Below are positions 8,294 to 30,300 of a stretch of DNA of 64,000 bases, piece after piece. Both the position numbers and the translations under genes were made by a program. Position 1 is the first letter of the stretch. Each line of letters begins with the position of its first letter. A model generated the notes under the pieces. That model was given only the letters and a program-made list of their open reading frames with translations. It was not told the origin of the DNA and made no database searches. This DNA comes from Antechinus flavipes (Eukaryota), in the NCBI RefSeq assembly GCF_016432865.1, contig NC_067398.1:335730001-335794000 (forward strand), read 5' to 3'.

Positions 8294-9572
8294 ATGTTCA
8301 GCGCTGAAGAACGGAGCCACATCGTCCAGATTTGGAACTACCTGTCTGGTCATGAGGCCATTTTCGGGACTGAGTTGTTGCAGAGGTGATGCTCAGATAG
8401 GGTGGGGGAGGGAGTAGGGTGGGATACGGGGGCGGGGCAAGGGCAGACACTAAGTCCGCTCTCCCCCAACCCAGGAGATGAGAGAGAAGGGGTTCGGGGA
8501 CAAAGGGAGAGTGTCCCAGGTGATTTGGGGGGGAAGGTTGCCCAAGAGAAGTGAAGAGGAAGAGAGAAAGGCTGGAGGGAGCAGCCCAAGGTCTTCGGGC
8601 TGACGGGGAGGATGCTGCTAACCAGAGCTAAAAGGATGCGGATCCTGAGGATGAAGAAAGGAATCTGGTATCGCTTTGGGAGGCTTTTCCCTAGGAAGGT
8701 TTAAAGTGTGCCAAGTTAAAGCAGCTAAGATTAAGCGTTCCGAGAGGGGAGCAGTCTCACCTCTAGAGGGGAGCTGGTTGAGACCAAGCCAGAGAAAATA
8801 GAAAGGAGATCGTAGGGAGAATGGTGGGTGCTCCCACTCCTGCTCACGTTCCTTCCTTTCCTCCACTATCCACAGGTTGTTCACCGTATATCCCAGTACG
8901 AAAAGCTACTTCCCACCCTTGATCCCTGGCCTGGAGCTAACCCAGATGCAGAACCACGGGGAACAGATATTGATGGCCGTGGGTGTGGCCGTGGATAACA
9001 TGTATGATCTTCGGACTGCCCTGAGCGGTCTGGCTGATCTGCATGCCTACAGTTTAAGGGTGGAACCGACCAACTTCCATGTGAGCCTGGGAGCCCTTCT
9101 CTCCATCCATTCATTCTTCTTCCCAATCTTCAGTCTTCTCACTCAAACACTGTCAGTTCACCAGCCACCCTGACTCCCATTGTCCCTTCCCATCCATTCA
9201 TCCACAAGCCGATGCATGACTTAGACATTGGAATTGGAATCTCATTAGTTATAGGGAATTAGCAGTTCTATCTACTTTACTGTAAATGGGGAAAGATGGG
9301 GAATGCCCAGCCCAGATACCTCCACTGGCTTTTCCCATCAAGATGGATGTTGGGGCAGGAATTAGTATTCAGAGAGAAGGTCATGGGTTCTAAGTGGTCT
9401 CTGAGTCTTAATGATGCCTTCCATCCTCTCTGCCCTGCTGTAGTTCCTGATCCATTGTTTCCAAGTGATGCTGGCTTCCCACCTGCAGTCAGAATACACT
9501 GCAGAGATGCATGCAGCATGGGACAAGTTTCTGACCAATGTGGCGGTGGTCCTAACAGAGAAATATCACTGA
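8294..9572 (+). CDS. HBM: alphaD / mu-globin, intact, 141 aa
   Basis: Exons 8294-8385, 8876-9080, 9444-9572 (92/205/129 nt, GT-AG). [45 protein letters not shown]...[10 protein letters not shown]...[77 protein letters not shown] and CF.V.LASHLQ are HBM hallmarks. AATAAA at 9624. Confidence 0.95.
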
Positions 9573-14577: not shown

Positions 14578-17030
14578 CCATCTATCCTGATCTTCCAAGG
14601 AGCTGCATATCATAGGAAGGGATGGCAGCCTGACTGAAACTGGAAGGACCTTAGATATCACCTACACTAAATACCTCTCCTCATTTAACATATGGGGAAA
14701 CTGAGATCAAGGGAAGTTAAGTAATTTGCTCAAGTCCCTGCTGGACCCCTGCTGCCCTAAAGTAGGCACTGTGCTAAAGAATGAGTGACACCCACTAGGA
14801 GAATTACTTAGGGAGTATTCTCCTGGTAACCCTATAAAAGGACCATAGGGACTGCTGGGCCTTCATATTTCTGGTACTGCAAAGACCGGAGATAGAAGTT
14901 GAGATGGCGCTCTCTGCAAATGACAAGAATAACGTGAAGAGGATCTGGAGTAAGTGGATGGGAGGCAATGCTAGTGCTGAAGCCCTGTTGAGGTAAGGGC
15001 TCCCCTTCTTTTCCCCCTCTTTGCACTTCCTACATTCCCTAAATCCAACTCCTGTCCGGTAGACACATGGATGCCCTTAGAATCCAGACTCCCAAACACT
15101 TGCCTTCTCCGACCTGAGCCTAACAAGTCCCCTGGATCTTCTGAGCTCAGAATCCCTCCTCTCCTTCTTAGCCTGGACTGTTTCCCCCGTTTTCAACCCC
15201 TGGTCTAGTTCCAGGTGCCCAGTGGACAATGCTCGAGATGATACCCAGAATGAGTCCCTCTTTCTTCTTTCCTTCCCGCAGGACCTTCCTCTCCTTCCCC
15301 ACTACCAAGACCTACTTCTTAATCAATACGGCCCGGCTCTGTCGACGGTCAGCACCATGGTCAGAAGGTGCCCTTTCCCAGGCTGTTGCCAACCTGGATG
15401 ATCTGCGCATGACCCTGTCCAAACAGAGCTTCAAGCTGAAAATGGATCCTGTTAACTTCAAGTTGAGTCAGAGATCAAGGGACCCACCAGAGCTGGCGAA
15501 TGGGGATTCCCAGTAATGCTATATGCTAGCCACGCAGCTCCATTGAGGTGTAATGAAGATTTGGTATGGACAGATTACTGGATTCCGAGTTAGAGTGGCA
15601 TTTGACCGCGGTCAGGACGGGCGCAATGGGCGGCTGGAATACAAGACAGGTAAGGGAATGAAGCAGGCAGGGGCAGCGGGGGCAGGGAAGTGTGGGTGCC
15701 CACCTGACTCGGGAGCTGTCCCTTCTCTCCCAGCTCCTCTCTCACTGCCTGATAGTGACTCTGGCCCGTCACCTGAGCAAGGATTTGACTCACAAAGTGC
15801 ACGCCTACATGGATAATAAGTTCTTTGCCTCTGTGGCTGCCTCTATGCGCTGATCTCAAAGTACCGTTAGGTCTTCAGAGGCAAGGAATTTCCCTCACCC
15901 TGCTGCCCCAACTGGGCTGCGGATCCCTCGGTGTCCCCATCTCCTCTTACTCCGCACAGTCTGATGGACGTCTCCGAATAAAGTCCGAGTCTGCCACAAT
16001 TTGTGTGCGTTTGTCTTTTGCGTCTGGGGCTGAGCTGCTTGTCTTTGGGGGGGTGATGGTGGTGGAAGAGGTGTTGAGAGAAAGGGAACTCTATCCTGAC
16101 TTAACCTTCATTCCACAGCCCTGAAGGGATGGAGTGGGCAGGGAAAGCCTTGCGATAGAAATTGGAGAGCACTTGCACCCAGATCAGCTTCTTTGTGTAC
16201 TCTTGCAGCCCACAAACATCCTCACCCATTTTATTTGTTCCATTCTGTTAAAATCTTGCTTGTCATCTGAGTGAACAAGATTGGGTTTTCTAAATGAGGA
16301 AATGAAAGATTTTAAAACTTGATCTGGCCGTAAGAGGAGCTCCTTCACTAGAACTCAGAAAATGCACTATTCTTCCCTTAGCCTAGTTAACACCATAATT
16401 GGCATGTTTGCACAGAGGCTTTGTTGCCTGAATATACTGTCTGATGAGATTGGAAGGAGATGATAAACTGAGAAGTGACATCACTCTTCAACTGATCTTT
16501 CAGACAGAGTGAGAGAGGTTAGCCCAATACAATCTTAGCTCATTCTGAGGACGAGCAGAGTATAACCTTGGTATGCCCTGGGCTCTCCTTAGCAACTTTG
16601 AGACATTCTATAAGGAAACCAGAGACAGGTCATTTTAGGGAGGGACATTTCAAGAGAATCTCAGATGCCTTGGGCTAGAGACAGACTATTGCCTAGATCC
16701 CTGCACTCCCCCCCTCACCCCTCCAAAGCAAAATTTTGACTTTCCCCTTTCCTTTTCTTATTCTTTTTCTTGTGTTTACTTTTGCTGGTGTTCTTTGGCT
16801 GCTTGCATTCCTCACTGAGTTTGCAATGGCATATAGAGAACTGGGGAATGGGTTGGAACCAAAAACTTGATATAAATTGAATAGTTATGTTTCTTTGCTG
16901 AAACTATGACTGGACTGAGAATGACTTTCCATCCCTACCCATAGCACTTTCCTATGGATAGAGTAGGGTGAGCTCTACCACCAAAATTGGGCTCACTCAT
17001 TTACATGCTTCATCACTTGCAATAAGCCTA
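14578..17030 (+). repeat. alpha-globin duplication unit A
   Basis: 5' flank (ctatcctgat..ctgca.atcatagga..gcagcctga) matches 19733 onward and about 27950 onward; 3' flank (ttgcctgaatata..ctgatgaga..gatgataaa..catcactcttcaactg; cactcatttac..cacttgcaataa) matches 22100-22700 and 30300-30590. Confidence 0.85.
14904..15870 (+). pseudogene. alpha-globin pseudogene A
   Basis: Exon remnants 14904-14992, 15282-15462, 15734-15870. Exon-2 donor GT>TT at 15463. Indels scramble the CD/E region, a deletion removes the proximal His (cagagcttc in place of ctgagcgacctgcacgcccat), and exon 3 is frameshifted with an early TGA. CCAAT decayed to AGAAT (14778); TATAAAA kept (14833); AATAAA at 15977. Confidence 0.95.
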
Positions 17031-18560: not shown

Positions 18561-19043
18561 AATTGGGTAATTATCCAATATGGATGTCAATTTCTTCATC
18601 TGTATAGGAAGGGGTTGGATTCAATGATTTCTGAGCTATCTTTCAGCTCTAAATCTATGATGTTATGGACCCCAGGATAGCTCCTTGCAGTACAACTTTC
18701 ATCCTCAGCACTGCTATTTCAGGAAGGTGGGGCTGGAGAGGAGAGCGCTCCTCTGCCCAGGTGCCTCTCAGCTGGTCAGGATGCTTCTTAGGGAGGTCAG
18801 GGAAAGGAACCTCCAACTTGACTGCTGCAATAACTGTGACTTGTGAGTGAGCCAAAGTGTGTGACTGGGCTGTCCTTGGTCTTCTTCTAAACACGTTTGA
18901 GCCTCATAACATTCCAAAGGAATAGTTTGTTCAGATGACAAAGTGACTCAGTGGTAGAGAAGGAACTGTCCTATGTCTTCTGCACTTCAGGACAGAAATG
19001 CTGCCCAGGGTTTGTCTTCATTTGCCTCCCAGGTTACTAGTGT

Positions 19044-19588
19044 TGTTAAGGCACAGTTCTCTTTTATTGTCCTGACTCAGTCCCCCTAATTATCCTGACC
19101 CCAGTCCTGACTCAGTTTCTCTGCTTCAGTTTATAATAATCAGTTCAAAGCTCAGTTCCGCAAAATCTCCCCTTCCTCTTTATCAGAATACTTGATAAAG
19201 GATAAAAGATCTTATGTTTTAAAATATCAGAATGCCTCTCCCTATCCTAAGCTACAGGAATGTCAGATACTGTTTTATTAAGATGCCTCTCCCCATCTCT
19301 GGGGTTCCTTTCCCCATTAGGTCATCCCATCCCCCATGCCCTGTCAGAACTGGATTGTCAGTGTCCTGTTCCCACTCTCAGCACCTGACTCCGCCCCTGC
19401 CTCAGTATACCCCCTGAGTCTGAGCCATGTGTATATAGGTCATTGAGAACTCACATTGTTTGCTGGATTCTTGGAGATGATAGCCCTGGGACAGAACCAT
19501 GGATCCATTTGGTCCCAGCAAATCTCTCCCTTTTAATAAATTTATTTATCTCTAATTTCTATCTTGCCTCAGTTTCAACGGCATTACA
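19044..19588 (+). mobile_element. solo LTR (probably class I/ERV1-type), 545 bp
   Basis: TGTTAAG...GCATTACA. 4-bp TSD GTGT at 19040-19043 and 19589-19592. The empty site (ggttactagtgtgagca) is present in paralogous unit C at about 27793-27809. TATATA at about 19433, AATAAA at 19535. Confidence 0.92.
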
Positions 19589-20290
19589 GTGTGAGCAGAC
19601 AGAAAGAACCCTAAGTGTGAATGTGAGCCAGGGTCAGACACTCCTGTTCAAATGCAGCACTGACCTGAGTTCCCTTCCCCTTTCCCTCCTCAGTTTTTAA
19701 ATCTGTAGCATCTGAATATGAAACTGATTCTTCTATCCTGATTTGTCAGGGGTCTGCACATCATAGGATGAGGATGACAGCCTGAGTGAGAGCTGGAAAG
19801 GACTTTGGATGTCACCTACACCAACTACTTCTCAGTTTACAGATGGGAAAACTGAGATCCACGAATATTAAGTAATTTTTTCCCACAAAGTACTAATTGA
19901 GAGAGCCAGGTGATTTGTACCCAGGTTCCTTATTTCAATTGACATTCATTTGAAAGCCCTCATTCTGCTTTCCATGGAAAGCTGCAGGTGAAGGAGATAA
20001 TAACCATTTACAAACTTGCTATGTGCTACCCTGTTTTCAATTATCTCTTGTGATGTTTACAACAACCCTGTGAAGTAGACGCTATTTTACCCCTATTTTA
20101 TGGAGGAGGAAACTGAGAAAAACAGAGATTAAATGACTAGTCCAAATTCACACAACTAGGAAGTTCCTAAGGCCATATTTTTAATTGAGGTCACTCTGAT
20201 TCCAGGGCTCGTGTTTGGAATTGCCCCAACCTGAGAAACGTCCCAGATGCAGAGCCTGAGCAGAGTCTCTTCAGAAGTTGGGGAGCCCGA

Positions 20291-20457
20291 GATAGACGGC
20301 AGCACAGCGCCGTCTACAGGGGGTGAATAGCTTTAACGCCATCAGGAGCAGTGACTCAGCTGGGCTTCTGGCACCCCAAACGGGCACGGTGCCAACCAAT
20401 GAGCGACGCCCACTGAGAGAACTTCTCAGGGCGTGCCTTCCAGGGAACCCCATAAAA
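20291..20457 (+). promoter_or_regulatory. adult alpha-globin promoter
   Basis: AGATAG at about 20291, TGACTCAGC (NF-E2/AP-1-like) 20352-20360, CCAAT 20396-20400, CATAAAA 20451-20457; CpG-rich. Confidence 0.85.
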
Positions 20458-20518
20458 GCACTGTGGGGCTCCAGGCTGCACATTTCTGGTCCTGCAAAGA
20501 ACTCAGAAAGAAGTAAAA

Positions 20519-21516
20519 ATGGTGCTCTCTGGTGCTGACAAGGCTAACGTGAAGTCCGTGTGGAGTAAGGTGGGAGGCAACGCCGGTGCCTACGCAGGTG
20601 AAGCCCTTGCCAGGTAAAGGACTCCCCTCTCCTCCCCGGCCTTCGCGCTTCCTACCTATCCCCAGTCCCATAGATCCACGAATGCAGAATCCAAAAACCC
20701 AATCCAGGTCGGCAGACCTCCGACAGAAATCCGTCGAGTGTCCCGGGATCTTCTGAGCTCAGAACCCTTCCTCTCCTTCTTAGCCTGGACCGTTTCCCCC
20801 ATCCTCAACCCTGGCTCCAGCTCCAGGTGCCCAGTGGACAGCGTTCGGGATGATGCTCCAAATGAGTCCTCTTTCTTCTTTCCTTTCCGCAGAACCTTCC
20901 TCTCCTTCCCCACTACCAAGACTTACTTTCCCCACTTCGACTTGTCCCCCGGCTCCGCCGACGTCAAGGGTCATGGTCAGAAGGTAGCTGATGCCCTTTC
21001 CCAGGCTGTTGCCAACCTGGATGATCTGCCCGGAACCCTGTCCAAACTGAGCGACCTGCACGCCCATAAGCTGAGAGTGGATCCAGTTAACTTCAAGGTG
21101 AGTCAGGGATTGAGCGACCCACCGGGGGGAAGCGAAGGGACCGGGGCTGGTGACTGGATGCCCAGTGCAGCCAGTAAGGTCGCTTTTGAGTGTAATGGTT
21201 CCTACAATGAACCCTTGGCATGCGGGGCAGATTACTGGATTTCAGGGTAGAGCAGGGTTTGAGCGCGGTCAGGACGGGGGCAGCGGGCGGGTGGAGTACG
21301 AGACAGGTAAGGGAAGGAAGCAGGCAGGGGCAGTGGGGGGAGGGAAGTGTGGGCGCTCACCTGACTCGGGAGCTGTCCCTTTTTCAGCTCCTCTCTCACT
21401 GCCTGATCGTGACTCTGGCCTGTCATCTGAGCAAGGATTTGACTCCCGAAGCCCACGCCTCCATGGACAAGTTCTTTGCCTCTGTGGCTACCGTGCTGAC
21501 CTCCAAGTACCGTTAA
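20519..21516 (+). CDS. HBA: adult alpha-globin, intact, 142 aa
   Basis: Exons 20519-20613, 20893-21097, 21388-21516 (95/205/129 nt, GT-AG). [142 protein letters not shown]. His58 and His87 present; AATAAA at 21626. Confidence 0.98.
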
Positions 21517-23184
21517 GTTGTGTCGGAAGCCAGGGATTTCCACTGCCCTGCCGCCATCATCCGGGCTGCGGGTCCCTCGTTGTCCCCAATCCCTTCCACT
21601 CCGCATGGGCAGATGGACGTCTCCGAATAAAGTCTAAGTCTGCCACAAGTTGACTCAGTGCGTTTGTCTTCTGCGTCTGGGGCTGGGATATGTGTGGGAA
21701 AGCTGGAGCTGGAAGGGTTGGGGAATGGAGGAAGTGTGAAGAGGACTGGGGAATCATATCCTGATTTCCTGCTTCTTGTACAGTCTAAAGGGGTGGAAGT
21801 GGGTAGGGAAAGGCTTACAGTAAAAATGGGAGATCACTTGCACCCAGAGCAGCCTCCTTATTCCCCCTAGTACTCTTAGGGGCCCCACAAAGATCCTTAC
21901 CTATACTCCAGTCCCCTTTTGTTCCTTCAATTCTGTTGTAAACATTGGCTGCAATCCAAATGAACAAGATTGAATTCTTTAAATGGGAAGACAACGTATA
22001 ATAAAACTTGATGTGGACCTGGGAAGAGCTCTTTCACTAGAACTGAGAAAGGGGACCATTTCCCCCTAAACCTAGTTGGCACTTAATTGGCATATATTTG
22101 CACAAAGGCCTTTTTGCCTGAATATACAGTCTGATGAGAATGGAAGGAGATGATAAACTAAGAAGTAACATCACTCTTCAACTGCTCTTTCAGACAGGGA
22201 GTGAGAAAGGCCAGCACAGCACAGCCCTAGTTTCTACTCTTTGTGTGGAGGAAGAAGAGGGTACCAGTCTTGCCCTAGGCTCTCCTTCAAAACTCTGAGA
22301 TATCTTCTAGAAAACCTGAAACAATCATTTTAGGGAGGGATGTTTCAAGTGAGGTCTCTGTCCTAGAAATAATCTTTTACCTAGATCCCTGTCTCTACCA
22401 TTACCCCCCAAAAGCAAAATTTTGACTGTCCTCTTTCCTCCTCCCCTTCTCTTCTCCTCCCCTTCTCTTTCTTGTGTTTAAGTTTGCTAGTGTTTTTTGG
22501 CAGCTTGCATTCCTCACTAAGTCTGCAAGGGCATGTAGGGAGCTGGGGAATGAGTTGGAGCCAAAAGCTTGATATAAATTGAATAGTCATGTTTCTTTGT
22601 TAATATTAGGACTGAGTCTTCATTTCTACCCATAGCACTTTCCATCCTCTACCACCAAGAGTTCTAGATTGGACTCACTCATTTACATCACTTGCAATAA
22701 ACCACTTCCCTGTTCTAGGTTTCATTGGTCTCTCTATCATGAAAGGTTTCGAGAAGCTCCAACACTGCTAGGCTAAGCTCTCCAGATACATTTCTCTTCT
22801 AACATTCTATTGACAATTTCCCACACTCTAGATTATAAGGTCCCTGCCAACTCTAATAGTTAGCATGCTAAGTTGGATCTAGAAAAACAACTGAGTAACA
22901 CTTGAATAATAGTTAAATAACATGTCATCTATATGAACATCCCTGTCTTGTATGATAGAAGCAGTACAAGCGTACCACATGGATGTAGAATCAAAAGATC
23001 TACCTACCAGGCTCAGGTCCTTCACTTAATCTTGATATTTCATCCTCTTTGAGCCTCAGATCACTCATCCTGAAAATGAGGATAATGATCTTTGCCCCAA
23101 ATCCCTCACAAAGTGTTCAACTAGTTCAAATGGGATCCTTCCAAATGAGTGCATTGTAAGCTTCAAGCTCATATTCATTTGTCA

Positions 23185-23440
23185 ACCATATTGTTGTTTT
23201 TGTTGTTTAGTTGTTTCAGCCATGTTGGACACATTATGACCCTATTGGAGGTTTATTTAGAAGAGATAATGGAGTGGTTGGCCATTTCCTTCTCCAGTTC
23301 ATTTCACAGAAGAGGAAAATGAGGCAGAATAAAGTGACTTATCCAGGATCACACAGCTAGTAGATGTTTGGGCCCAGATTTGAACTTAGAAATATTAGTC
23401 TTTCTGAATCTGGACTCTATCCACTAACTCACCTAGTAGA
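23185..23440 (+). mobile_element. Mar1-like marsupial SINE
   Basis: gttgtt..gtttcagccatgt..atgacccta..ggagtggttggccatttccttctccag.tcattt.acaga.gaggaaa.tgaggca; similar copies at about 12850 and 46800. Confidence 0.6.
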
Positions 23441-23999
23441 AAGACTTTACAGAGAAGATGATGCTTGAGTTTTGTCTTGAAAGAAGAGAGGGATCTGTGA
23501 GTCAGAGGTGAAAGAAAGAACATTTGAGGCATGGGGGACAGTGAGTGAAAAGGACACAGGCAGGAGATTGGAGCACCATGTGTAATGTGATGTGACTCTT
23601 ATGACTGGAGGGCAGGCAGGAACTGCAAAACCAGGCCAGTCATCTCTACATTTCCCACTTGACTCTGAAATCTTTTGGATTGTTTTGAACTTCTTTATGA
23701 ATCATGTCCCTATGCTGGATCCCCGTCCTCCATTCCTGTTCCATTTTCAGCTTTTTCTCATTAAACTGAAAGTTTCCTGAGGGTAGAAACTGTCCTTTTC
23801 ATATTTCTATCCCCAACTTTTAGCACAGTGCTTAGCACAGAGAAGGAATGTTTGTTGACTGACTGTGAGCAACACAGAAAAGGCCAGTTTGTCTAAATAA
23901 GAGAACTCAGCTGAGGAAGTAATTTCCATTTTATAACCTTTAATGTTTACATAGCACTTTAAATAGAATTATCTATTGGATCAAGTCTCCAAAAAACAT

Positions 24000-25340
24000 C
24001 TCAAAGTATGTGAATACAATTACAAAACAATTTTCAAATATAAAGTCATCTAAACAATTGGAAAAAATATCAATTGCTCACGGGTAGCCTAAGCCAATAT
24101 AATTAAAAATTTTGCCTAAACTATAATTTATTCAGTGCCAAACCAAACTATGAAAAACCTATCCAAAAATAAAATATAACAAATAAAAAAATATAACAAA
24201 TTCAAGAAAGAATAGAAAGAATAGCAAGAAAAAATAGACAAGAAAAAATAACAAAATTCATCTGAAAGAACAGAAGATCAAGAATATCAAGGGAATTAAT
24301 TTTAAAAATACAAAGGAAGATAGCCTAGGAATACCAATTCTTACATCATATCATAAAGCAGTAATTCTGAAAACTATCAGGTACTAGCTAAGAAGCTAGT
24401 GGTGGAATAAACTTGATATGAAAAACACAGTAGTCAATGACAAAAGTAACCTAGTGTTTGATAAACCCAAAGACCTCAGTTTGGGAGATAAGACAAAACT
24501 GCTGGGGAAACTGGAAAGCAGTAAGACACAAACCAGGTAGAAACTTAACATCCCACACTGTATACCAAGATAAGGTCAGAATGGGTATATTATTTAGATA
24601 GAAAGATGACACCATAAGGAAATTGGAAGAGTAAGGAATAATCCACCCCTCAGATCTATGGAAGGAGAAAAATTCATGATCAAATAAGAGAGAGCATTAC
24701 AGAATGCAAAAGAGATCATTTTGATTATAATAAATTTAAAAGCTTTTGTACAAACAAAATCAATGCGACCAAGATTAGAAAGAAAGCTGGGAAACAGTCT
24801 TTATAGCAAGTGTCTCTGGTAAAGGCCTTATTTCTCAAATATATAGAGAGAACTGAGTCAAATTTGTCAGAACAAAAGTCATTCCCCATTTGATAAATGG
24901 TAAATGGTATGTTTTCAGATGAAGAAGTTAAAACTATCTATCAAACAAAGAAGTGCTCTAAATAACTTTTGTTTAGAGAAATGCAAATTTAAAAAACTCT
25001 AAAATACTACCTCACACCTAAGAGGTTGGCCAATATGACAAAAAAGGAAAGTGATAAATATTGAAGAAAATGTGGGGAAATTGAAACATTAATTCATTGT
25101 TGGTGGAATTGTAAACCGATCCAACCATTCTGGAAGGCAATTTGCCCAAAGGGCAAGCAAACTATACATATCCTTTGATCAGCAATACCATTACTGGGTT
25201 TATATTCCAAAGAGATCATTAAAAAGGCAGAAGAACCAACACATAAAAAATATTTATAGCAGCTCTCTTTGTGTTGGCAAAGACCTGGACATTGAGGAGA
25301 TTCCCATAAATTGGGAAATGTCTGTATAACTTTTTGGCTG

Positions 25341-25382
<42 letters not shown>

Positions 25383-26760
25383 ATGCACGCGCGCTGAGGC
25401 AATTGTGGTTAAGTGACTTGTCCACACACCTAGAAAGTATTAAGTGTCTGAGGTCAGGTTTGAACTCAGGTCATCCTGACATTAGGGCTGGTGCTCTATC
25501 CACTCCATAACCTAGCTGCCCCAGACTGAATAAGTTTTGATATATGAATGTAGTGAAATACTATCATGCTATAAGAAATATGGAGGATGTTCTCAGAAAC
25601 ACCTGAAAAGGGTTAAACTGATAAAAGTGAAACATACTTTATACACAAAATAAAATGAGCAGTGCCAGAAGAACTAATGTATAAAGTAAGAGCAATATTG
25701 TGTGATGATCAACTATGAATGACTTGGCTCTTCTTGGCATTGCAATAGTTCAAGACAATACTGGGTTCATGGTAGAAAATGCTATCCTCATGCAGAGAGA
25801 ATAGATGGAGTCTGAATCCAGATCAAAGCATGCTCTTTTCACTTTAATTTTTTCCTTTTGGTCTGTTTCTTCCTTCATAACATAACTGATATGGACATAT
25901 GTTTTGCATGATCACACATGCATATCCTATATCAGGTTGCTTGTCATTTTAAGGAGTAGAGAAGAGTAGGATGTAGGAAGAAAAATTTGGAGCTCAAAAA
26001 AATTTTAAAGTAAATGTTACATATATTTTAACATATTTAACATGTATTGGATTACCTGCTATCTAGGGGAGAGGGTGGGAGGAAGGAAGGGAAAATTTGA
26101 AACACAAGATTTCGCAAGGGTCAATGTTGAAAAATTGCCCATGTATATGTTTTATAAATATAAAGCTTTAATAAATAAATAAAGATTTTAAAAACTAAAT
26201 GTTTAAAATTGTCTTTACATGTGATTGGGAAAAAATTAAATGACATTTAAACAGAAAAAAAAAGGAGAACAGAGGTACCAAAAAAAACTGACCTAGAAAT
26301 TAGACAAGGAGAGAAAATTTAAGAATCAACAAATTCTCACTATTGATTTAAAAATGCTAATTAAAATGACTCTGAGGTACCACTTCACATCTATCAGATT
26401 CAATAAGATGACAGGAAAAGATCATAATAAATACTGGAGGGGATATAGGAAAACTAGGATACTGAGGCATTGTTGGTGACGTTCTGGACTGATATGGTCA
26501 TTTTGGAGAATAATTTGGAACTGGGCCCAAAGGACTATAAAATTGCATACCCTTTCATCCAGCTGTGTCACCACTGGGTTTGTAGTCCCAAAAAATCATA
26601 AAAGAGGGAAAAGGACTCATATGTGTAGAAATGTTTGTAATTAGCTCTTTTTGTGGGAGCTAGGAATTGGAAATTAAATAGATGCTCATCAACTGGGGAA
26701 TAACTAAGTTATGGTATATGAAAGTAATGAAATGTTATTGTTCTATAAGAAATGAGGAAT
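24000..26760 (+). mobile_element. compound L1 ORF2/3' UTR fragments with nested elements
   Basis: L1 ORF2 3'-half-like sequence (ctgggaaaactggaaagcag; gtagaaatgcaaatt; cattgttggtggaattgtaaac) running into L1 3' UTR copies; interrupted by a SINE at 25337-25522. Confidence 0.75.
25337..25522 (-). mobile_element. tRNA-derived SINE with (CA)n tail nested in L1
   Basis: Reverse complement begins ggggcagctagg..ggatagagcaccagcccta..tcaggatgacctgagttcaaa; (TG)n microsatellite at 25344-25381. Confidence 0.8.
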
Positions 26761-27330
26761 AGAAGGCAAGCAATGTGCGAGTTGTACTTGCCAAGTATAT
26801 ATAATAAAAAGACAAGAAAAATAAAATGAAAAAAGTATTCCTCCATCTGCATTCAGACTTCATCATTTCTCTGTCTGCAAAGAACTTTCATCATGGGTCC
26901 TCTGAAATTGACTTGAATCACTATATTGATCAAAGTAGCTAAGCCTTTCATAGTTGATCATCATCACAATATTACTGTTACTATGTACAGTGTTCTCCTG
27001 ATTCTCTTCAATTTACTTTGTATTAATTCATAGAAGTTTTCCCAGATTTTTCCAAAAACATCCTGCTCATCATTTCTTAGACCACAGTAGTATTCCCTCA
27101 AAATCATATAACAAAACTTGTTCAACTATTCCCCAGGTGATGGGCACCTCCTCTGTTTCCAATTCTTTAACTGGACTTAAGTTTTGACCCAATGATTTCA
27201 CAATTAGGTTGATGTCTCCTATATCAGAGGGGTAATAAGAGTCTCTACATCGCAAAGCTGTGTGGATGGAAAGGGAATAGCTTGAGTTCCATTCCTGTCT
27301 CTGACACAATAGAATTGTGAGCCTGGGAAA

Positions 27331-30300
27331 GGTAATTATCCAATAGGGATGTCAATTTCTTCATCTGTATAGGAAGGGGTTGGATTCAATGATTTCTGAG
27401 CTGCCTTTCAGCTCTAAGTCTATGATGTTATGGACCCCAGGATAGCTCCTTGCAGTACAACTTTCATCCTCAGCACAGCTATTTCAGGAATGGTGGGGCT
27501 GGAGAGGAGAGCGCTTCCCTGCCCAGGTGCCTCTCAGCTGGTCAGGATGCTTCTTAGGGAGGTCAGGGAAAGGAACCTCCAACTTGACTGCTGCAATGAC
27601 TGTGACTTGTGAGTGAGTCAGAATGTGTGACTGGGCTGTCCTTGATCTTCTTCTATATGTGTTTGAGCCTCATGGCATTCCTAAAGGATAGTTTGTTCAG
27701 ATGACAAAGTGACTCAGTGGTAGAGAAGGAACTGTCCTGTCTCCTGCACTTCGGGACAGAAAACCCCAGGGTTTGTCCTCATTTGCCTCCCAGGTTACTA
27801 GTGTGAGCATAAAGAAAGACCCCTCAGTGTGAATGTGGGCCAGGACCAGACATTCCTATACAAATGTTGCACTGATCTGGGTTCCCTTCCCCTTTCCCTC
27901 CTCTGTCTTTAAATCTGTAGCATCTGAGTATGGAACCGTCTGATTCTTCTGTCCTGATTTGTTAGGGAGCTGCACATCATAGGATGAGGGTGGCAGCCTG
28001 AGTGAGAGCTGGAAAGGACTTTGGATGTCACCTACACCAATTGCTTCTCCTCAGTTTTCAGATGGGGAAACTGAGATCCAGAATGTTAAGTAATTTTTTT
28101 CCCATAAAGTATTAATTGAGAGATCCAGGTGATTTGTACCCAGGTCCCTTATTTCAATCGACATCATTTCAAAGCCCCCATTCTGCTTCCCAAAAGGTAG
28201 GAGAGGAATGTAATGGAAAACTGCAGGTGAATGGGATTGATTATTTACTTTTGATTTTACTCATTTATTATTATTATATTTAATAATTTGATTTTAATAA
28301 TATATTATATTTATGATCATTATTTACTTATTGATTATTTAATTTATTATTTGATTATTTACAAACCTAATATGTGCCATACTGCGCTCAACTTTTTTTC
28401 AATTATTATCTCTTTTGATGTTCACAGCCCTGAATAGTAGGTGCTATTTTACCCCTATTTTACAGACGAGGAAACTGAGAAAAACAGAGGTGAGGTGACT
28501 TGTCCAAGTTCACACAGCTAGGAAGATTCTGGGGCCATATTTGAACTCAGGTCACCCTGTCTCCGGTTCTCGTACTTGGGATTGCCCCAACCTGAGTGCA
28601 AAGGAGAAAAGTCCCAGACGTAGAGCCTGCGCAGAGCCTCTTCTGCAGTCGGGGAGCCCGAGATAGACGGGAGCACAGCGCCCCCCGGAGGGGGTGCACA
28701 AACGCGACACCGTCTGGGTCTGTCACTCAGCTGGGCCCCTGGCACCCTAAAACAGGTACTGTGCCAACCAATGAGCGACGCCCACCGCGGAGCCACCCCG
28801 AAGCGTGGCTGTGAGGCTTGGGACGGTGTATTTCTGGTCCCGAGAGAGCCCAGAAGGAAGCCAAGAGGGCGCCCTCTGCGAATGACAAGACCAAGGTGAA
28901 GGCCGTGTGGAGCAAGGTGGGGGGTCAACGCCGGTGCCTAGGCAGGTGAAGCCCTCACGAGATAAGGGGCCGCCTCCTCGCCTCGCTTCCTCACCTCCTA
29001 CCCTGCCTGTACCCGGTCCCCAGGCCTAGAGACTCACGGGGGCCCTGCGGCATCTAGTGACCTACTCCAGGTCCAGAAGCTTCAATACCTGCCTTCCCCA
29101 GCCTGGGCCCATCGAGTGTCCCGGGACCTTCTGTGCTCAGAATCCCTCCTCTCCTTCTTAGCCTTTCTTCTTTCCTTCCCGCAGGACCTTCCTTCTCCTT
29201 CCCCACTACCAGGACCTTCTTCTTAATGAATACGGCCCCGGCTCTGACGACATTCAGCACCATGGTCAGAAGGTGCCCTTTCCCAGGCTGTTGCCAACCT
29301 GGATGATCTGCCCGGGACCCTGTCCAAACTGAGCGACCCGCACGCCATAAGCTCAGAGTGGATCCAGTTAACTTCAAGGTGAGTCAGGGATCGAGCGACC
29401 CACCGGGGGGGGGGGGGGGGGAGGAAGCTGAGGGACCGGGGCTGGTGACTGGATGCCCAGTGCAGCCAGTAAGGCCGCTTCTTTGAGTGTAATGGTTCTT
29501 ACAAGGAACCCTTGGCATGCGGGGCAGATTACTGGATTTCAGGATAGAGCAGGGTTTGAGCGCGGTCAGGACGGGCGCAGTGGGCGGGTGGAGTACGAGA
29601 CAGGTAAGGGAAGGAAGCAGGCAGGGGCAGTGGGGGGAGGGAAGTGTGGGCGCCCACCTGACTCGGGAGCTGTCCCTTTTTCAGCTCCTCTCTCACTGCC
29701 TGATCGTGACTCTGGCCTGTCACCAAGGACTTGACTCCCGACCTCGAAGTACCGTTAAGTTGAGAAGCCAGAGATTTCCACTGCCTGCCGCCATCATCCG
29801 GGCTGCGGGCCCCTCGGTGTCCCCAATCCCTTCCATCCTGCTGGCGCAGATGGGACGTCTCCGAATAAAGTCTAAGCCTGCCACCGCTTGACTGTGTGCG
29901 TTTTTCTCCTGAATCTGGGGCTGGGATGCAGAGGTGGAGGAGGTGTGAAGAGCTACAGGGAACCCGTCCTGAAACATGGTTCCTTCCACACCCCTGAAGA
30001 GATGGAGGTGGGTAGAGAAGGCCTTGCAGCAGAATTGCGAAATCACCTGCACCAAAACAGCCTCCTGAGGTTTCCTGCCCTACCCCCTGCCCCTTTTGCA
30101 GACCCTCTCAAGCATCCTCACTTCTACTCCATTTTGTTTTTTATATGTGTTATAGGCAACGACTGTGATCTCTGTGTAGTAAGTTTGGGTTCTCTAAGGT
30201 CTTGCTCTGGAAGGAACTCCCTCAGGAGAACTGAGAAAGTTCAGTGTACCCACTTTATTCTACTTGTTTCCTTAATTTAAGTGTTTGCACAGAGACCTTG

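What the first reader, a model, noticed from the sequence alone, without database searches (positions are those of the whole stretch)
19044..19588. Solo LTR with erythroid-type motifs sits only upstream of the single intact adult alpha gene
The element is a 545-bp TG...CA insertion with a GTGT TSD, and the empty site is preserved in unit C, so it inserted after the B/C duplication or was excluded from conversion. It ends about 930 bp before the ATG. It carries two AP-1/NF-E2 cores (TGACTCA at 19073 and 19108), an inverted GATA pair (TTATCA 19180, TGATAA 19193), a GC box (ctccgccc, about 19389), and its own TATA and polyA in the gene's orientation. It is a candidate exapted proximal enhancer or alternative promoter that may have favoured retention of this copy. 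Function is inferred, not shown.
Basis: partly seen in the sequence, partly recalled or inferred. Interest (0 to 1): 0.7.

Follow-up and report, generated by a model that had tools for sequence, protein, structure and literature searches.

The report
Old solo LTR upstream of alpha-globin
A 545-base leftover of an ancient retrovirus really does sit 930 bases upstream of the only working adult alpha-globin gene of the yellow-footed antechinus, but it drifts like neutral DNA, so it looks like an ordinary genomic fossil rather than a recruited globin switch.

Summary
Window 19044-19588 is a 545-bp TG..CA element flanked by a 4-bp GTGT duplication. The unoccupied site, with a single GTGT, is kept in paralogous unit C at 27801-27804.

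The window is Antechinus flavipes chromosome CM028217.1. I fetched the orthologous alpha loci of two other dasyurids:
- **Tasmanian devil:** it carries the same LTR at the same site.
- **Fat-tailed dunnart:** its unit B has a clean empty site.

Between antechinus and devil the LTR is 92.7% identical. The flanks are 93.7% and 94.5%, introns 92-94%, and the true promoter and exons 96-98%. The named motifs are no better kept than random LTR positions (P = 0.15). CpG content is as depleted as the bulk DNA around it.

The two TGACTCA cores are one 13-bp block duplicated 35 bp apart, and they lack the GC flank that NF-E2 needs.

The LTR-free dunnart also has unit B as its only intact adult alpha gene. 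Units A and C share old lesions in all three species. So the LTR does not explain why this copy was kept.

Verdict: an ordinary, old, neutrally evolving solo LTR.

The parts
19040..19043 (+). Left copy of the 4-bp target-site duplication (GTGT)
   Evidence: It reads GTAT in the devil.
19044..19588 (+). Solo LTR, 545 bp, TG..CA ends, same orientation as the alpha gene
   Evidence: Present at the orthologous site in Sarcophilus (L003 about 8523-9067). Absent from Sminthopsis unit B (L002 about 9048).
19044..19459 (+). Inferred U3 (enhancer/promoter part), up to about 25 nt past the TATA box
   Evidence: Inference from the TATA box at 19432. It contains internal direct repeats.
19069..19116 (+). 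Two exact copies of GTCCTGACTCAGT (19069-19081 and 19104-19116), each holding a TGACTCA core. This is an AP-1/TRE type site without the GC flank of a MARE.
   Evidence: Both copies are kept in the devil.
19180..19198 (+). Inverted GATA-type pair, TTATCA ... TGATAA
   Evidence: The devil has CTATCA ... TGATAA after a 2-bp deletion.
19389..19396 (+). GC-box-like CTCCGCCC
   Evidence: Kept in the devil.
19432..19437 (+). TATA box of the LTR
   Evidence: Kept in the devil.
19535..19540 (+). LTR poly(A) signal AATAAA, 103 nt after the TATA box and 48 nt before the LTR end
19589..19592 (+). Right copy of the target-site duplication (GTGT)
27801..27804 (+). Empty (pre-integration type) site in paralogous unit C, with a single GTGT
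20345..20481 (+). The alpha gene's own promoter: TGACTCAGC (MARE-like, 20352), CACCC, CCAAT (about 20396) and ATAAAA (about 20452). It is conserved in antechinus, devil and dunnart.
20519..21516 (+). Intact adult alpha-globin gene of unit B (exons 20519-20613, 20893-21097, 21388-21516)
   Evidence: Matches NCBI 'hemoglobin subunit alpha [Antechinus flavipes]'.

Best explanation
This is a solitary long terminal repeat of an endogenous retrovirus. The 4-bp target duplication suggests a class I (gamma-like) virus. A provirus integrated about 0.9 kb upstream of alpha-globin unit B in the common ancestor of Antechinus and Sarcophilus. That happened after the last homogenisation of the B and C flanks. 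The provirus then collapsed to a solo LTR by recombination between its two LTRs. Since then the LTR has drifted like the surrounding non-coding DNA. The AP-1, GATA, GC-box, TATA and poly(A) motifs are the retrovirus's own compact U3-R control region, with the AP-1 block duplicated as retroviral enhancers often are. They are not an erythroid module acquired or maintained for the globin gene. The gene is driven by its own conserved promoter and, by analogy with other mammals, by distant upstream elements outside this stretch.

Shown here: identity as an insertion, its age bracket, its neutral-like divergence, and its independence from the B-only gene pattern. Inferred: the retroviral class, the U3/R/U5 borders, and the lack of regulatory activity.
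For: Structure: TG..CA ends, 4-bp duplication, and TATA then AATAAA in one orientation. Empty sites are seen in antechinus C, devil C and dunnart B.

Age: the LTR is at the same site in Sarcophilus L003, colinear at 91.65% over 3964 columns.

Divergence, antechinus versus devil: LTR 92.7%, flanks 93.7% and 94.5%; Fisher P = 0.32. Promoter 96.3%, exons 96-98%, introns 92-94%. No 50-bp bin of the LTR stands out from the flank bins. The devil copy has lost the first 6 bp and has a 9-bp indel in the R region.

Motifs: 1 of 44 motif positions changed; random placements do as well in 15% of trials.

CpG: observed/expected 0.13 in the LTR, 0.08-0.09 in the flanks, 0.45-0.54 in the promoter and gene. 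Two of the three LTR CpGs differ in the devil.

Background: solo LTRs are very common in dasyurids, about 64,500 in the devil (PMC11334065).
Against: All seven motifs are still recognisable in both species after more than 11 million years. With the TTATCA-to-CTATCA change counted as a conserved GATA site, the chance of that is only about 0.04. Only two species carry the LTR in my data, so the power to detect weak constraint is low. No other copy of the LTR family could be found for comparison, so the claim that the motifs are family features is an inference. They were at least present in the antechinus-devil ancestor.
Confidence: 0.8

Rival explanations
1. Exapted proximal enhancer: the LTR's U3, with its AP-1 pair, GATA pair and GC box, is bound in erythroblasts and boosts the alpha promoter about 0.9 kb downstream in Dasyurinae.
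For: Motif density is above the window background. All motifs are still recognisable in antechinus and devil. The LTR has the same orientation as, and lies close to, the only intact adult alpha gene.
Against: Overall and binned divergence equals the neutral flanks. Motif conservation is not significant (P = 0.15). The TGACTCA cores lack the GC flank required by NF-E2/Maf, while a properly flanked site exists in the promoter itself. The LTR is CpG-depleted like methylated bulk DNA. The dunnart runs the same single-gene arrangement without the LTR.
Confidence: 0.07
2. Alternative promoter: transcripts start at the LTR TATA box (start near 19460) and read into the alpha gene.
For: TATA box and gene share one orientation. 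The 50-bp bin holding the TATA box is the best conserved in the LTR (0.98), though this is not significant among 11 bins.
Against: The LTR's own AATAAA lies 103 nt after the TATA box, with no viral splice donor left to suppress it. Fifteen ATG triplets lie between the presumed start and the alpha ATG. Alpha exon 1 has no acceptor to splice into. The NCBI models seen begin at the normal ATG. Several runs of one organism label hold only 0.07-0.14 of the words of 18700-21700. That is roughly what the mature mRNA alone would give, but this could not be checked.
Confidence: 0.03
3. Passive architectural role: the LTR's poly(A) signal terminates read-through from the upstream pseudogene unit A, or its heterology limits B/C gene conversion, and so it indirectly protects unit B.
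For: The poly(A) signal is in the sense orientation. The flanks show concerted evolution of B and C. Within antechinus, B and C are 93% identical left of the LTR and 88% right of it.
Against: There is no direct evidence. The dunnart keeps B intact without the LTR. The A/C lesions are shared across species and so are independent of the LTR.
Confidence: 0.04
4. Not a retroviral LTR at all, but another kind of inserted repeat that happens to have TG..CA ends.
For: No second copy and no internal proviral sequence could be found with the tools at hand. Its length of 545 bp lies outside the 281-486 nt range reported for representative dasyurid ERV clades.
Against: TG..CA ends, a 4-bp duplication, U3 direct repeats and a TATA-103 nt-AATAAA-48 nt-end layout together are the classic LTR signature.
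Confidence: 0.04

Closest known systems
Solo LTRs of class I (gammaretrovirus-like) endogenous retroviruses in dasyurid marsupials (MEGrv clades; about 64,500 solo LTRs in the devil genome, Harding et al. 2024, PMC11334065)
   Same: TG..CA ends, a short target duplication, U3-R-U5 layout with TATA and AATAAA, a solitary state, and an age of millions of years.
   Different: At 545 bp it is longer than the representative LTRs listed (281-486 nt). Its family and class were not determined here. The class I guess rests only on the 4-bp duplication, which is established knowledge of integrase families and not a test.
Human ERV-9 (LTR12) solo LTR at the 5' end of the beta-globin locus control region (PMC5416847)
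   Same: A solo LTR in a globin cluster, in the sense orientation, with U3 repeats carrying GATA-type motifs. That LTR is reported to be active in erythroblasts.
   Different: ERV-9 activity was shown experimentally, and its U3 has many tandem repeats with GATA, CCAAT and CCACC motifs. Here there is one duplicated AP-1 block and scattered GATA motifs, neutral-like divergence, and no expression or chromatin evidence. It lies in the alpha cluster, not the beta cluster.
Dasyurid alpha-globin cluster as described for Sminthopsis macroura (alpha-D, psi-alpha3, alpha2, alpha1, theta, omega; Patel et al. 2008, PMC2529266)
   Same: The same gene order, with three adult-type units, the first of which is a pseudogene.
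   Different: In the three genomes compared here the third unit (C, presumably alpha1) is also broken. The LTR is found only in the antechinus and devil unit B.

Membership tests
Solo LTR of an endogenous retrovirus | Terminal TG...CA dinucleotides | tested here: met
   Starts TGTTAAGG and ends GCATTACA.
Solo LTR of an endogenous retrovirus | Short (4-6 bp) target-site duplication and a matching unoccupied site | tested here: met
   GTGT on both sides. A single GTGT at the empty sites of antechinus C, devil C and dunnart B.
Solo LTR of an endogenous retrovirus | U3-R-U5 layout: enhancer repeats, TATA box, then a poly(A) signal near the 3' end, all on one strand | tested here: met
   Direct repeats at 19069-19116 and 19225-19297, TATA at 19432, AATAAA at 19535. 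The borders are inferred.
Solo LTR of an endogenous retrovirus | Other copies in the genome, some flanking gag-pol-env | not testable with these tools
   No copy in the 64-kb window or the 42 kb of fetched loci. No hit in viral contigs. No whole-genome search is available.
Exapted LTR enhancer or promoter (ERV-9/LTR12-at-globin type) | Purifying selection: slower divergence than the neutral flanks, with motifs better kept than the rest | tested here: not met
   LTR 92.7% against flanks 93.7% and 94.5%, Fisher P = 0.32. Motif test P = 0.15. Only two species, so power is low.
Exapted LTR enhancer or promoter (ERV-9/LTR12-at-globin type) | Erythroid-specific sites (NF-E2/MARE with GC flank, GATA1) | tested here: inconclusive
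   GATA-type hexamers are present. Both TGACTCA cores lack the GC flank in either orientation.
Exapted LTR enhancer or promoter (ERV-9/LTR12-at-globin type) | LTR-initiated or LTR-dependent transcripts; open chromatin in erythroblasts | not testable with these tools
No chromatin data are available.
Exapted LTR enhancer or promoter (ERV-9/LTR12-at-globin type) | The target gene's state depends on the LTR | tested here: not met
   The LTR-free Sminthopsis crassicaudata has the same intact unit B, the same conserved promoter, and broken units A and C.

The most novel reading that the evidence does not exclude
A retroviral LTR fixed in the stem of Dasyurinae was recruited as a lineage-specific proximal enhancer, or a weak upstream promoter, of the only functional adult alpha-globin gene, and has kept its AP-1, GATA, GC-box and TATA motifs for more than 11 million years. 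It would be an alpha-globin counterpart of the primate ERV-9 LTR at the beta-globin locus.
Probability: 0.06. Interest if true: 0.45.

Novelty: new member of a known kind. Interest (0 to 1): 0.15.

Why it matters
As it stands it matters little. It is one of tens of thousands of solo LTRs in a dasyurid genome.

It does give a clean presence/absence marker: present in Antechinus and Sarcophilus, absent from Sminthopsis unit B. It also gives a time stamp for the last B/C homogenisation in the dasyurid alpha-globin cluster.

The comparison further shows that the pattern of one working adult alpha gene between two pseudogenes is shared by three dasyurids and does not depend on the LTR. If the LTR were shown to be active in erythroblasts, it would be a second, independent case of a retroviral LTR wired into a globin locus.

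Tried and rejected
- **Read laying.** I masked them or left them out in scripts.
- **The look-up of sequencing runs.** It gave only coded organisms and whole-stretch word shares (0.73, 0.53, 0.25, 0.14). I could not split these between the LTR and the gene, so I draw no conclusion from them.
- **Other copies of the LTR.** None found with sensitive blastn or nhmmer in the window, in the devil and dunnart loci, with a 20-mer in viral contigs, or in the scan's notes by sequence. Only pairwise comparison of natural copies was done.
- **More dasyurid loci.** Cluster members added only a Dasyurus protein with no contig on record.
- **Joined exon model.** In some searches the three alpha exons were joined inside a local script to check the reading frame, and compared only with the window itself. 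Database and cross-species steps used an unspliced reference, stored protein ids or single exons.
- **Rejected: that the dunnart's empty site proves insertion after the Sminthopsinae split.** The dunnart's B and C flanks cluster together, so conversion from an empty C could have erased an older insertion there.

Full report
**What is there**

The stretch 19044-19588 is 545 bp long, begins TGTTAAGG and ends GCATTACA. It is flanked by GTGT at 19040-19043 and at 19589-19592.

A self-comparison of the window shows that the flanks of this element are repeated about 8.7 kb downstream. Window 18566-19043 matches 27331-27804 at 93.3%, and 19584-19974 matches 27795-28192 at 88%. There the two flanks abut with a single GTGT at 27801-27804. 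So this is a clean insertion with a 4-bp target duplication.

The element ends 930 nt before the ATG at 20519.

**Surroundings**

The window holds the following:
- two embryonic-type alpha-like genes, at about 4.5-5.3 kb and 8.8-9.6 kb;
- three adult-type units: A (about 14.9-15.8 kb), B (20519-21516) and C (about 28.9-29.8 kb);
- theta, at about 40.1-41.0 kb;
- omega, at about 49.5 kb.

Only unit B has an open three-exon gene (exons 20519-20613, 20893-21097, 21388-21516). Units A and C have stops and frameshifts.

In some searches the three exons were joined only inside a local script, to check the frame against the window itself. No joined model went to a database tool.

**Whose genome, and the orthologues**

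I searched with the unspliced 170-codon frame that contains exon 2. It found annotated alpha-globins of Antechinus flavipes, Sarcophilus harrisii and Sminthopsis crassicaudata. Their encoding contigs gave three loci:
- L001, which is identical to window 10519-39891. The window is therefore A. flavipes GCA_016432865.2, CM028217.1.
- L003, from the devil.
- L002, from the fat-tailed dunnart.

Window 18566-22500 aligns colinearly to devil L003 8042-11955 at 91.65%, straight through the LTR. The devil thus has the same LTR at the same site. Its left duplication now reads GTAT and it has lost the first 6 bp of the LTR.

The devil's unit C and the dunnart's units B and C have empty sites. The dunnart's unit B reads ...GGTCACTAGTGTGAGCAGACAG... 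there.

**Age**

The insertion predates the antechinus-devil split. Antechinus and Murexia diverged about 11 Ma, and the devil-Murexia calibration used is 4-22 Ma (PMC9290055).

A tree of the flanks gave this picture:
- antechinus B groups with devil B, and antechinus C with devil C;
- these two pairs are joined by a very short internal branch (0.007, support 0.82-0.89);
- the dunnart's B and C group with each other.

The B and C flanks have therefore been homogenised separately in the two lineages. The LTR most simply entered B in the stem of Dasyurinae, after the last homogenisation and shortly before the antechinus-devil split.

There is one caveat. Because the dunnart's B and C have been converted, its empty B site could in principle result from conversion by an empty C.

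**Is it under constraint?**

| Segment | Identity, antechinus vs devil (substitutions only) |
|---|---|
| LTR | 92.7% (497/536) |
| Left flank | 93.7% |
| Right flank | 94.5% |
| Introns | 92-94% |
| Alpha promoter | 96.3% |
| Exons | 96-98% |

- The LTR does not differ from the flanks (Fisher P = 0.32).
- In 50-bp bins the LTR ranges from 0.80 to 0.98 and the flanks from 0.86 to 0.96.
- Of the 44 positions inside the seven named motifs, one differs. TTATCA becomes CTATCA, which is still GATA-type. Random placements of the same motif lengths inside the LTR do as well in 15% of trials. If that change is ignored, the chance is about 0.04, which is suggestive at most.
- CpG observed/expected is 0.13 in the LTR, 0.08-0.09 in the flanks, and 0.45-0.54 in the promoter and gene. 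Two of the three LTR CpGs differ in the devil.

So the LTR lies outside the gene's CpG-rich domain and behaves like germline-methylated neutral DNA.

**Are the motifs 'erythroid'?**

The motif cluster is denser than the window background. Two AP-1 cores occur in 1.2% of 545-bp tiles, and five or more GATA-type sites in 4.5%. No other tile has both.

That density is what a retroviral U3 is expected to show. The two TGACTCA cores are one exact 13-bp block, GTCCTGACTCAGT, duplicated 35 bp apart, and a second imperfect 22-nt repeat is spaced 51 bp. Neither core has the GC flank that NF-E2/small-Maf needs, in either orientation (the requirement is established knowledge of the NF-E2 consensus). They are generic AP-1 sites.

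By contrast, the gene's own promoter carries TGACTCAGC at 20352, followed by CACCC, CCAAT and ATAAAA. All of these are invariant in antechinus, devil and the LTR-free dunnart.

**Alternative promoter?**

The LTR's AATAAA lies 103 nt after its TATA box and 48 nt before its end. Fifteen ATG triplets separate the presumed start from the alpha ATG. Alpha exon 1 offers no splice acceptor. A productive LTR-driven alpha mRNA is therefore unlikely on sequence grounds.

I could not test it with reads. 

**Did the LTR favour retention of unit B?**

No. The dunnart lacks the LTR, yet it has the same pattern: B intact, A and C broken. In exon 2, units A and C of all three species share a diverged, frame-breaking block that B lacks. 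Unit A also shares an 11-12-bp deletion in all three species. B's status as the only working adult alpha gene is thus common to all three dasyurids and independent of the LTR.

**Family**

I could not name the LTR family. No other copy turned up in the window, in the two fetched loci, in viral contigs or in the scan's notes. Representative dasyurid ERV clades have LTRs of 281-486 nt, and the devil genome holds about 64,500 solo LTRs (PMC11334065). The 4-bp duplication suggests a class I, gamma-like integrase. That is an inference from established knowledge, not a test. No consensus of the element was built; only natural copies were compared.

**Verdict**

The functional idea is not supported by any test I could run, and its 'retention' part is contradicted. 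It is an ordinary solo LTR, useful as a phylogenetic marker and as a time stamp for conversion. Residual odds of a regulatory role are about one in ten, to be settled by erythroid RNA and chromatin data.

Noticed in passing
window 20519-29891 (L001 10001-19373): The NCBI model 'hemoglobin subunit alpha isoform X1' of A. flavipes (168 aa, P0007) joins exons 1-2 of the intact unit B to the frameshifted exon 3 of pseudogene unit C, about 8 kb downstream. This is either read-through splicing or an annotation artefact.
   Followed up: partly
window 20345-20481: The alpha promoter carries an NF-E2/MARE-like TGACTCAGC, followed by CACCC, CCAAT and ATAAAA. It is almost invariant in antechinus, devil and dunnart: 96.3% and 92.5% identity, against 86-94% in the introns.
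   Followed up: partly
window 18833-19974 versus 27590-28190; L002 and L003 counterparts: The flanks of units B and C evolve in concert. The dunnart's B and C cluster together. In antechinus and devil the B and C lineages separate only just before the species split.
   Followed up: partly
window 15280-15465 and 29183-29381; L002 1809-1979 and 17390-17588; L003 2694-2873 and 20677-20868: Exon 2 of pseudogene units A and C shares one diverged, frame-breaking block in all three dasyurids. A 7-bp deletion is shared by antechinus A and C and devil A and C, but not by dunnart C. An 11-12-bp deletion is shared by unit A of all three species. Together these point to old pseudogenes that also exchange sequence.
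   Followed up: partly
window 8850-9566: The second embryonic-type gene is only about 41-54% identical to adult alpha. By position it may be the alpha-D gene listed for Sminthopsis macroura in PMC2529266, rather than a second zeta.
   Followed up: no
   Followed up: no
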